Positions 46,446 through 46,955 of a stretch of DNA of 64,000 bases are shown here, piece after piece. The notes under the pieces are model-generated. The model was given only the letters and a program-made list of their open reading frames with translations, was not told the DNA's origin and did not search any database. Every line of letters begins with the position of its first letter. Position 1 is the stretch's first letter. The DNA comes from Magallana gigas (Eukaryota). The stretch spans positions 24,304,001 through 24,368,000 of the forward strand of contig NC_088854.1 in the NCBI RefSeq assembly GCF_963853765.1, read 5' to 3'. The position numbers and the translations under genes are program-made.

Positions 46446-46955
46446 TCGTTATATTCAGTTGTATTTTCTCACTATATAACTCTATATAGACGAATAGTCA
46501 ATAATTGTAATATTAGCTCGTCCGAAAAATATTGACCGGTCAATATTTTTTTATATTGACCGGCTAGGAATAATATCTAGAGAACATTCCCTCTATTTCA
46601 AATAATCGCCTCTGATTTGTTGATTCGTAAACGATGACGCGAATAACTCTTCGCGACTCCAAAAACAAGGCCATTTAATGCTGAGGATATTTTGGAAACG
46701 AACTTTGCACAAAATTGAATTCATGAATTCTTTGTTGAGCTGAGAAAATTACGGCGACCTGTTTTCAATTAATTTCTTAAACTTTGGTTTGTTTCTTCAT
46801 ATAACAAAACAAATGTTGACTGTGTTTTCGGGCAACATTGATTATTAGCCCCCTTGGAACGAAAATATTGCCCTCCGCTTCGCGTCGGGCAATATTTCGT
46901 CCCTCGGGGGCTAATATAATCAATGTTGCCCTCAACCCCAGTCAATATTTGTATA
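46446..46955. mobile_element. 510-bp hairpin-terminated element inserted without TSD, related to the 20231-20973 element
   Basis: Absent at the paralogous site in unit B (catttgact|attaaacac). Contains a hairpin at 46800-46957 with core ctccgcttcgcgtcgg (46873-46888). Confidence 0.8.

What the first reader, a model, noticed from the sequence alone, without database searches (positions are those of the whole stretch)
46446..46955. Second hairpin element with unrelated arms but the same three motifs, inserted with no target-site duplication: candidate recombinase-mobilised family
Seen: this element and the one at 20231-20973 both begin with GTTATA and both end in a hairpin module of about 160 bp (46800-46957 vs 20812-20973). 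That module starts TATAACAAAACAAA, is centred on CTCCGCTTCGYGTCGG, has ccct(c/t)g...ctcgggg about 20 nt from the core and finishes TATTTRTATA, while the stems differ completely. The duplicated unit B supplies the empty site (catttgact|attaaacac), showing a clean 510-bp insertion with no TSD. Established: lack of TSD is typical of tyrosine-recombinase elements (Crypton, DIRS) and Helitrons, and integron attC sites are folded hairpins bounded by AAC/GTT cores whose structure rather than sequence is conserved. Inference: a family of non-autonomous elements recognised as folded single-stranded DNA by a tyrosine recombinase or HUH enzyme, analogous to attC or REP/RAYT. It may correspond to already catalogued Crypton-type repeats; I cannot check this.
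Basis: partly seen in the sequence, partly recalled or inferred. Interest (0 to 1): 0.75.

Follow-up and report, generated by a model that had tools for sequence, protein, structure and literature searches.

The report
Hairpin-ended oyster transposon, site-specific insertion
This is an old, internally deleted copy of a small non-coding jumping gene of the Pacific oyster that ends in a long, strand-specific DNA hairpin and inserts, without duplicating its target, at the edge of a short mirror-symmetric AT-rich site, which points to a cut-and-rejoin (tyrosine) recombinase more than to the rolling-circle enzymes usually blamed for such oyster repeats.

Summary
Window 46446-46955 is a clean 510-bp insertion with no target duplication; the empty paralogous site is at 51687|51688. 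It is a deletion derivative of a 673-bp non-coding element, subfamily B (about 236 copies).

The 20231-20973 structure is two nested copies of a 373-bp sister, subfamily A (about 2,360 copies). The shared 16-nt core occurs 2,662 times in this Magallana gigas genome and 0 times in the reversed control.

A and B have unrelated hairpin arms but identical geometry:
- a 3-bp cap with a TTC loop;
- a 2x2 TC/TC mismatch, then 17 bp, then a second 2x2 mismatch between C/G clamps;
- about 45 further bp and a 3-nt ATA tail.
On the other strand this reads as tandem G.A pairs under a GCGAAGC cap.

New here: 44-55 independent flanks give a dyad target, AAYAT-N6-|ATRTT, with insertion at the edge of the 6-nt spacer. 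The element's first bases mimic the right half-site. That fits a tyrosine-recombinase core site with one-strand exchange, as in attC or dif/CTX. It does not fit the TT target and short palindrome of Helentron HINEs.

The enzyme is therefore inferred. The scan has met this hairpin code before on other DNA of this genome.

The parts
46446..46955 (+). Subfamily B copy, 510 bp. It is an internally deleted derivative of the 673-bp canonical element and has no coding capacity.
   Evidence: Empty paralogous site. 31 canonical copies of 673 bp share the same ends. The window copy matches them at positions 3-225 and 226-510, with about 161 bp missing between.
46446..46454 (+). 5' terminal box TCGTTATAT (consensus TTGTTATAT). 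It is complementary to the box at the hairpin foot and resembles the right half-site of the target (ATRTWAY).
46525..46550 (.). Internal palindrome with a CAATAT-T6-ATATTG centre. It fits the target consensus and is a hotspot for nested insertions of the same family.
   Evidence: Self reverse-complement match. Nested B copies sit at this site in L005/L026, L045 and L047.
46799..46807 (+). 3' subterminal box ATATAACAA, which pairs with the element's first 9 nt.
46809..46952 (+). 144-nt terminal hairpin.
   Evidence: DNA fold of -52.5 kcal/mol, z = -12.8. Inverted repeats I1, I2 and I5.
46873..46888 (+). Conserved core: a 3-bp cap with a TTC loop, flanked by a 2x2 TC/TC mismatch. On the minus strand this reads as tandem G.A pairs plus a GCGAAGC mini-hairpin.
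46854..46855 (+). 5' side (TT) of the second 2x2 mismatch step, 17 bp plus one bulged A from the first step, clamped by C5/G5.
46904..46905 (+). 3' side (TC) of the second mismatch step.
46953..46955 (+). Unpaired 3-nt tail ATA. The element ends here.
46435..46445 (+). Target, left part: half-site AACAT (46435-46439) plus the 6-nt spacer TTGACT.
   Evidence: Sequence; target consensus.
46956..46960 (+). Target, right half-site (ATTTA here; consensus ATRTT).
51677..51692 (+). Paralogous empty site; the junction is at 51687|51688.
20447..20819 (-). Young full-length subfamily A copy (373 bp; 371/373 identical to the consensus), nested in inverted orientation.
20232..20446 (+). 5' part of the older host A copy.
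20820..20973 (+). 3' part of the host A copy, including its hairpin (20826-20968).

Best explanation
WHAT IT IS. The 510-bp stretch is a dead, internally deleted copy of a non-autonomous DNA transposon of Magallana gigas. The family has two subfamilies, A (373 bp, about 2,360 copies) and B (673 bp, about 236 copies).

ANATOMY. Each element is built like an integron cassette. It starts with a short box (TTGTTAT...), carries non-coding cargo, then has the complementary box (...ATAACAA), a roughly 145-nt hairpin and a 3-nt tail.

SHOWN.
- Insertion is orientation-specific, with no duplication.
- It falls exactly at the edge of the 6-nt spacer of a dyad-symmetric AT-rich site, (GTW)AYAT-N6-|ATRT(WAC).
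- The element's own joined ends recreate a similar site.
- Each subfamily carries an internal copy of such a site, and these attract nested insertions.

INFERRED.
- A dimeric tyrosine recombinase of the Crypton type, supplied in trans, binds these half-sites.
- It exchanges only one strand, 3' of the AAYAT half-site on the strand that carries the G.A mismatches.
- Replication then resolves the junction, as in integron attC x attI or CTX-phage/dif integration. This would explain the missing duplication and the missing spacer homology.
- The hairpin, with its strand-specific purine mismatches and GCGAAGC cap, marks and presents the element end.
For: - Clean insertion and no TSD, from one paralogous and two exact nested empty sites.
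- Target logo from 47 left and 55 right non-redundant flanks: -10 A 35/47, -9 Y 45/47, -8 A 42/47; +1 A 38/55, +2 T 53/55, +3 R 54/55, +4 T 44/55. The mirrored base ratios match (T:C 33:12 against A:G 35:19).
- Per-site palindromy peaks at an axis 3 nt left of the insertion point: 2.55 of 4 pairs, against about 1.4 at most other axes and 1.9-2.0 at the two next to it. That places the joint at one edge of a 6-nt spacer, where tyrosine recombinases cut.
- Internal consensus sites in A and B are hit repeatedly by nested copies (L005/26, L027, L025, L044, L045, L047).
- Precise head-to-tail tandems (L045, L058) are expected, because the 3' junction of a resident copy is itself a near-consensus target.
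- The hairpin geometry is identical in A and B although the arms are unrelated.
- The Helentron hallmarks fail: there is no TT target and no short palindrome (PMC4067079, PMC7492417).
- None of about 60 Rep hits on contigs 1-2 has a related GAGGCGAAGCCGA cap within 10 kb, whereas 2 of 41 DUF3504 hits there have one within 4 kb.
- A DUF3504 frame lies about 1 kb from the hairpin that another agent of this scan assigned to a Crypton.
Against: - No autonomous element was read. No hairpin with this exact core is near any recombinase or Rep frame.
- The two cap/DUF3504 co-locations are few (0.23 expected) and their spacing and orientation are not consistent.
- Described Cryptons have 4-6-bp terminal direct repeats and no hairpins (PMC3212892); these elements have neither feature as described.
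- The element's own joined ends give a 7-nt spacer, not 6.
- The overall architecture (5' TT, subterminal inverted boxes, 3' palindrome, no TSD, tandem arrays) is also that of Helitron2/Helentron derivatives. This genome holds more than 150 Helitron-like Rep hits, many inside open frames of 2,600-2,900 aa.
- A strand-specific hairpin and a one-sided strong target (ATRT) also suit HUH enzymes.
Confidence: 0.5

Rival explanations
1. The family is a Helentron/Helitron2-type non-autonomous element (a HINE with an oversized 3' palindrome). One of the many oyster Rep-helicase(-endonuclease) proteins would mobilise it by rolling-circle, single-strand transposition. In this reading the hairpin is the 3' termination or recognition signal, and the boxes are the asymmetric subterminal inverted repeats.
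For: - Matching architecture: two Ts at the 5' end, a 9-12-bp box 2 nt from the 5' end repeated in inverted form just before the 3' palindrome, no TSD, and exact head-to-tail tandems (PMC4067079; PMC7492417).
- B also has an inverted copy of the 5' box about 20 nt downstream, like the 'IR' of the Cg_HINEs.
- More than 150 Helitron_like_N hits, many inside open frames of 2,600-2,900 aa, could act in trans.
- Strand-specific hairpins are typical HUH substrates.
- Another agent of this scan filed a 143-base hairpin of this kind as Helitron-type (s1-366424).
Against: - The target is not a TT (or AT) dinucleotide in T-rich DNA. It is a positioned dyad with a 6-nt spacer, and shifted boundaries that would give a T|T target are excluded by exact nested empty sites.
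- The palindrome has about 65-bp arms and ends 3 nt from the terminus, against 5-10 bp stems lying 8-35 bp from the terminus.
- There is no T run or CTRR at the 3' end.
- No Rep frame lies within 10 kb of any non-A/B core or, on contigs 1-2, of any related cap.
- None of the 11 published Cg_HINE flank sets contains the GTTATA or TATAAC boxes in the readable supplement.
Confidence: 0.3
2. The family is mobilised by another single-strand-specific enzyme that has not yet been tied to metazoan transposons. One option is a Y1 HUH Rep, IS200/IS605-like or REP/RAYT-like, working by peel-and-paste at replication forks. It would read the G.A-strand hairpin and insert 3' of AYAT on that strand.
For: - On the G.A strand the element sits immediately 3' of a short conserved target (AYAT|), with the hairpin next to that end. 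Its far end can pair with the sequence beside the hairpin foot. This is the same logic as the guide/cleavage-site pairing of IS608 (own knowledge).
- There is no TSD.
Against: - No such enzyme family is known in animals. Replitrons, the other eukaryotic HUH transposons, are reported from plants, algae and protists and have direct terminal repeats (PMC10288648).
- The second, mirrored half-site of the target has no role in this model.
- There is only one hairpin per element.
Confidence: 0.08
3. The conserved hairpin is a host-selected structured RNA or microRNA-like gene that merely rides on repeats, rather than a transposition signal.
For: Weak, sub-threshold microRNA-precursor matches to the hairpin: 36.6 bits against a gathering score of 92.
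Against: - About 2,600 copies with exact element boundaries.
- The hairpin is always 3 nt from the element end.
- Target specificity and nested insertions.
- No Rfam family reaches its threshold.
Confidence: 0.02

Closest known systems
Helentron-associated interspersed elements (HINE; DINE-1, Cg_HINE of the Pacific oyster) / Helitron2
   Same: Non-coding and very abundant. Two Ts at the 5' end. A subterminal box near the 5' end is repeated in inverted form before a 3' palindrome. No TSD. Tandem copies occur.
   Different: The palindrome has about 65-bp arms with a fixed cap and two fixed mismatch steps, against 5-10 bp. It ends 3 nt from the terminus. The target is a dyad AAYAT-N6-ATRTT rather than TT. 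There is no microsatellite or central satellite array. No Rep-encoding partner was found.
Crypton (tyrosine-recombinase DNA transposons; DUF3504-type recombinase)
   Same: No true TSD. The target has the layout of a tyrosine-recombinase core site. 143 DUF3504 matches (139 above the family's cut-off) are present in the genome. Other agents of this scan report oyster Cryptons with a 130-141-nt terminal hairpin and a TATAT target (unverified here).
   Different: Published Cryptons are defined by the recombinase gene and by 4-6-bp terminal direct repeats, and no hairpin is described for them. These copies are non-coding and have no terminal direct repeats.
Integron gene cassettes with attC sites (IntI), and CTX-phage integration at dif (XerC)
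   Same: The topology matches: box - cargo - inverse box - imperfect hairpin - joint. Structure rather than arm sequence is conserved. Strand-specific unpaired bases are present. Insertion is at the edge of a spacer without duplication, as expected for a one-strand exchange resolved by replication.
   Different: Those are bacterial systems. Here the hairpin is twice as long, the boxes differ (GTTATAT against GTTRRRY), there is no platform gene next to the arrays, and the enzyme is unknown.
IS200/IS605 (IS608) and REP/RAYT
   Same: Strand-specific hairpin next to the end. Insertion 3' of a short target on that strand. No TSD. The far end can pair with sequence beside the hairpin foot.
   Different: Those are prokaryotic, with short hairpins at both ends and a Y1 HUH transposase. 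The target here is two-sided and symmetric.

Membership tests
Helentron/HINE | Autonomous partner encoding Rep-helicase(-endonuclease) with the same termini | not testable with these tools
   Only 3.5 kb around the Rep domains could be read (L061-L090). By coordinates, no Rep hit lies within 10 kb of a non-A/B core.
Helentron/HINE | 12-15-bp subterminal inverted repeats, 2-4 nt from the 5' end and upstream of the 3' palindrome | tested here: met
   In B, TTGTTATAT pairs with ATATAACAA. In A, TTTTGTTATACT pairs with AGTATAACAAAA. The box starts 2 nt from the 5' end.
Helentron/HINE | Short (5-10 bp) palindrome 8-35 bp from the 3' end | tested here: not met
   The arms hold 63-65 bp and the hairpin ends 3 nt from the terminus.
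Helentron/HINE | Insertion within TT in T-rich DNA, without a TSD | tested here: not met
   There is no TSD, but the joint is N|AT inside a dyad site. A T|T reading is excluded by exact nested empty sites.
Canonical Helitron | 5' TC, 3' CTRR, 16-20-nt hairpin about 11 nt from the 3' end, insertion between A and T | tested here: not met
   The consensus ends are TTGTT... and ...TATA. The TC of the window copy is a private change.
Crypton | Encodes, or shares ends with an element that encodes, a tyrosine recombinase | not testable with these tools
   143 DUF3504 matches (139 above the family's cut-off) were located, but no DNA could be cut out. None lies within 10 kb of the listed core sites that could be compared with them.
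Crypton | 4-6-bp terminal direct repeats that match the target (recombination substrate) | tested here: not met
   No shared bases at the two junctions in 44 reconstructed sites. There is only weak similarity of the T-rich spacer.
Tyrosine-recombinase core-type site (works-like test, not membership) | Two inverted half-sites around a 6-8-bp spacer, with exchange at the spacer edge | tested here: met
   AAYAT-N6-ATRTT; the dyad axis is 3 nt from the joint.
Integron attC | Folded bottom-strand hairpin with R''/R' boxes and extrahelical bases, recombined by IntI next to an attI platform | tested here: inconclusive
   The boxes, the imperfect hairpin and the strand-specific mismatches are present. 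There is no integrase or platform, and folding in vivo was not tested.
MITE of a DDE transposon | Terminal inverted repeats plus a fixed-length TSD | tested here: not met
   No TSD, and the inverted boxes are asymmetric.

The most novel reading that the evidence does not exclude
Animal Crypton-type tyrosine recombinases move hairpin-ended elements, including thousands of non-coding cassettes, by an attC/dif-like reaction. A long imperfect hairpin with purine-purine mismatch steps presents the joined ends as a core site. A single strand is exchanged with a GTWAYAT-N6-ATRTWAC target. Replication completes the insertion. This would be the first defined recombination site and mechanism for Cryptons, and a eukaryotic counterpart of integron cassettes.
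Probability: 0.35. Interest if true: 0.8.

Novelty: new variant of a known kind. Interest (0 to 1): 0.6.

Why it matters
How Cryptons recognise their ends and choose targets is essentially unknown. The literature offers only short direct repeats and a model by analogy.

Here a very abundant, young family gives four things that can be taken straight to the bench:
- exact ends;
- a positioned dyad target;
- an internal copy of that target;
- a conserved, strand-specific hairpin code.
These can be tested by binding and cleavage assays with oyster recombinases against RepHel proteins, by circle-junction PCR, and by scoring new insertions.

If the rolling-circle rival is right instead, the family shows that Helentron-type elements can use a 145-nt structured end and a symmetric target, which would widen that group.

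There is also a practical point. The 'palindrome' at 20231-20973 and similar structures in oyster assemblies are nested self-insertions, not replication products.

Tried and rejected
- FETCHING AUTONOMOUS ELEMENTS. I asked for 16-20-kb stretches around Rep frames.
- PUBLIC CONTIGS. No recombinase protein was available by reference, so no recombinase search could be started.
- METAGENOME SCAN for the 16-mer. Of 118 sites checked, none lay in a hairpin, so these are chance hits in GC-rich bacterial DNA. One locus from a human-gut metagenome (L102) was left out of the script.
- FURTHER SUBFAMILIES with the same core or the same foot. Only 69 core sites have other neighbouring bases, and the foot pattern is barely above its control (96 against 49). 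No third subfamily and no coding copy turned up.
- OPEN FRAMES in 60 loci around copies: nothing recombinase- or Rep-like. Window ORFs are two innexins and two frames without a Pfam match.
- RFAM: only sub-threshold microRNA-like matches.
- LITERATURE. The core and end strings are in no searchable paper, and GCGAAGC with transposon gives nothing relevant.
- REJECTED READINGS.
  - A TSD of TA or AT under shifted boundaries: excluded by exact nested sites.
  - A serine recombinase: the joint is 3 nt off the dyad axis.
  - Replitron: it needs direct terminal repeats and is not known in animals.
  - A rolling-hairpin or telomere-like origin of 20231-20973: it is a nested insertion.
- INSERTION POLYMORPHISM. 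Contigs of four runs from four studies bridge both junctions of the filled allele, and no empty allele was listed. This copy looks old or fixed, so the reads add nothing on mechanism.

Full report
WHAT IS THERE

The window is from chromosome-scale contig C2 (24,304,001-24,368,000) of a 564-Mb oyster genome. A protein encoded elsewhere in it is 100% identical to a Magallana gigas entry.

The flanks of 46446-46955 continue into each other at 51687|51688 in a paralogous unit.

The last 144 nt (46809-46952) form a hairpin of -52.5 kcal/mol (z = -12.8). The sister hairpin at 20826-20968 gives -67.2 kcal/mol (z = -17.6).

The 16-nt core occurs 3 times in the window against 0.01 expected. It occurs 2,662 times in the genome, with 0 for the reversed control.

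THE FAMILY

Copies fall into two subfamilies.
- B. The canonical form is 673 bp. It starts TTGTTATATTCAG and ends CAATATTTGTATA. 31 full copies were read.
- The window copy is B. It has a private T-to-C change at base 2 and lacks about 161 bp between its positions 225 and 226.
- A. The canonical form is 373 bp. It starts TTGTTATACTTTCATG and ends CACTATTTATATA.
- Copy numbers. Core followed by GC (B arms) occurs 236 times. Cores whose next one or two bases differ from A and B number 69. About 2,360 cores are therefore in A arms.
- Neither subfamily has an open frame of note.

THE '20231-20973 ELEMENT' IS TWO ELEMENTS

- A minus-strand A copy at 20447-20819 is 371/373 identical to the consensus.
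- It sits inside a plus-strand A copy (20232-20446 plus 20820-20973) that matches the consensus at 358 of 373 positions.
- It also explains the string TATAACAAAACAAA at 20812, which is a junction product. Canonical A has TATAACAAAATAAAT.

HAIRPIN CODE

Consensus A and B fold into the same geometry:
- a 3-bp cap CGC/GCG with a TTC loop;
- a 2x2 mismatch (TC/TC);
- 17 bp (B has one bulged A);
- a second 2x2 mismatch (TC/TC in A, TT/TC in B) clamped by C4-5/G4-5;
- about 45 more pairs;
- a 3-nt ATA tail.

Outside the cap, only 21 of 60 ordered base pairs are the same in A and B, which is near the chance level for AT-rich DNA. The arms are therefore unrelated, while the cap, the steps, the spacing, the total length, the foot and the tail are kept.

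On the complementary strand the mismatches become tandem G.A pairs and the cap becomes GCGAAGC. B has a third cluster of purine-purine mismatches there. By my own knowledge such purine mismatches and the GAA mini-loop are stable in DNA, whereas pyrimidine mismatches are not. The signal therefore looks strand-specific, but folding in vivo is not shown.

A caution applies. Pairing in a palindrome is kept by construction. What counts here is the conservation of the unpaired features.

ENDS

- The first 9 nt (TTGTTATAT in B; up to 12 nt in A) are complementary to the box directly in front of the hairpin (ATATAACAA).
- When the ends are joined, or when one strand folds, the 5' end lies 3-4 nt from the 3' end at the hairpin foot.
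- This is the topology of an integron cassette: box, cargo, inverse box, hairpin, joint.

TARGET (the new result)

- Besides the paralogous empty site, two nested insertions rebuild their host sequence exactly: a B copy in a B copy (L041) and a B copy in an A copy (L044). This fixes the boundaries to the base and excludes a shifted T|T or A|T reading.
- From 47 left and 55 right non-redundant flanks, positions -10, -9 and -8 are A (35/47), Y (45/47) and A (42/47).
- Positions +1 to +4 are A (38/55), T (53/55), R (54/55) and T (44/55).
- The mirrored ratios match: T:C of 33:12 on the left against A:G of 35:19 on the right.
- In 44 reconstructed empty sites, complementarity between the two sides peaks sharply for an axis 3 nt left of the joint. 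The mean there is 2.55 of 4 pairs, against about 1.4 at most other axes and 1.9-2.0 at the two next to it.
- The target is thus AAYAT-N6-|ATRTT, weakly extended to GTWAYAT...ATRTWAC. The joint is at one edge of the 6-nt spacer, and the spacer is T-rich on the insert's top strand.
- The element's first bases (TTGTTAT) mimic the right half-site. Its 3' end carries a left half-site-like AATAT (B) or ACTAT (A), 7 nt before the joint.
- Both subfamilies contain an internal palindrome that fits the target. In A it is a perfect GTAACAT-N6-ATGTTAC. In B it is CAATAT-T6-ATATTG at window 46525-46550.
- These internal sites are hit again and again by nested copies (L005/L026, L025, L027, L044, L045, L047).
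- Exact head-to-tail tandems also occur (L045, L058).
- Independent support comes from the reads. In four public runs, about twice as many contig ends leave the element after the extra AT (place 46957) as directly at its end (place 46955).

WHICH ENZYME

Two layouts from the literature were compared.

Helentron/HINE elements (PMC4067079; PMC7492417):
- They have subterminal inverted repeats, a short 5-10-bp 3' palindrome, T runs at the ends and a TT target.
- The boxes, the 5' TT and the lack of a TSD fit the present family.
- The palindrome size and position and the target do not fit.

Cryptons (PMC3212892; PMC13465315):
- They are defined by a tyrosine recombinase and 4-6-bp terminal direct repeats.
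- Those repeats are absent here, and hairpins are not described for them.

However, two inverted half-sites around a 6-8-bp spacer, with exchange at the spacer edge, is the textbook layout of a tyrosine-recombinase site (stated in PMC3212892). A joint 3 nt off the dyad axis implies a 6-nt stagger. The absence of both a duplication and spacer homology is what a single-strand exchange resolved by replication gives in integrons and CTX/dif (own knowledge).

I therefore rank a Crypton-type recombinase acting in trans first (0.5), a Helentron-type RepHel second (0.3), and another HUH enzyme third (0.08).

ATTEMPTS TO FIND THE PARTNER

- The genome has at least 150 Helitron_like_N hits in several lineages, many inside open frames of 2,600-2,900 aa.
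- It has 143 DUF3504 (Crypton-derived recombinase domain) matches, 139 of them above the family's cut-off.
- None of the 69 non-A/B core sites lies within 10 kb of either kind of hit. The same holds for the listed A/B sites that could be compared, except one B site about 6 kb from a Rep hit, which fits chance.
- A related cap, GAGGCGAAGCCGA, occurs 409 times against a control of 6. On contigs 1-2, two of 41 DUF3504 hits have it within 4 kb, where 0.23 would be expected. None of about 60 Rep hits has it within 10 kb. This is weak, and the spacing is inconsistent.
- A DUF3504 frame at C2:12,222,841 lies about 1 kb from the hairpin that another agent assigned to a Crypton (s1-403189).
- No autonomous element could be read. 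The link to an enzyme stays an inference.

EARLIER NOTES OF THIS SCAN

The same hairpin code was found before on other DNA of this genome:
- s1-403199 and s1-380979 describe the cap and the G.A steps, which I confirm.
- s1-366424 files such a hairpin under Helitron-type.
- s1-375736, s1-361686, s1-375674 and s1-405588 report autonomous oyster Cryptons with a 129-141-nt terminal hairpin, a TATAT target and a hairpin spanning the joined ends.

I could not check the Crypton notes directly. They moved my first reading (Helentron, 65%) towards the recombinase, but the dyad target analysis is independent of them.

AGE AND STATE OF THIS COPY

Contigs from four runs in four studies, under two organism labels plus an oyster metagenome, bridge both junctions of the filled allele. 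No empty allele was listed. Together with the deletion and the mutated 5' end, this copy is old and dead. The family as a whole is young, with copies up to 99.5% identical to the consensus.

VERDICT

The thing is a transposon family of a known general kind, with an end structure and a target rule that the searchable literature does not describe. Whether Repbase lists the consensus could not be checked.

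Noticed in passing
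window 20974-21060: A (CT)n/(TC)n microsatellite of about 85 bp starts directly after the 3' end of the host A copy.
   Followed up: no
window 28731-28840: Another long hairpin (47-nt arms, 87% complementary, 16-nt tip GAGAGGCTCTCTTGCT). Its cap differs from the A/B code, so it is probably the end of a different element.
   Followed up: no
window 45073-45163: A hairpin with 39-nt arms (90% complementary) and a 13-nt AT-rich tip, 1.3 kb upstream of the finding. It is not of the A/B type.
   Followed up: no
window 45400-48000, 50730-52720, 58700-61430: Three diverged tandem copies (74-92% identity) of a 2-kb unit. The middle one supplies the empty site. The B copy entered after the duplication.
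   Followed up: partly
window 2401-3732 (+) and 7189-8409 (-): Two innexin genes (Pfam PF00876, E = 2e-66 and 1e-86).
   Followed up: no
consensus A, and window 20330-20350 and 20705-20725 in the two A copies; window 46525-46550 in B: Each subfamily carries an internal palindrome that matches the family's own target consensus. In A it is a perfect GTAACAT-N6-ATGTTAC. It may be a functional recombinase site rather than only a hotspot.
   Followed up: partly
L045 (G000:C7:47817324-47820610) and neighbouring hits up to 47821278: A 4-kb cluster of at least six whole and partial B copies, with exact end-to-start joints and rearranged fragments.
   Followed up: partly
G000, loci L066-L090: At least five Helentron-like Rep-helicase lineages (43-66% identity between them), with several members in open frames of 2,600-2,900 aa that carry OTU or endonuclease domains. 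This is a very active rolling-circle transposon population.
   Followed up: partly
L027:2004-2894 (-): A 297-aa open frame next to a nested A copy. By eye it looks like a Harbinger/PIF-type nuclease. It was not scanned.
   Followed up: no
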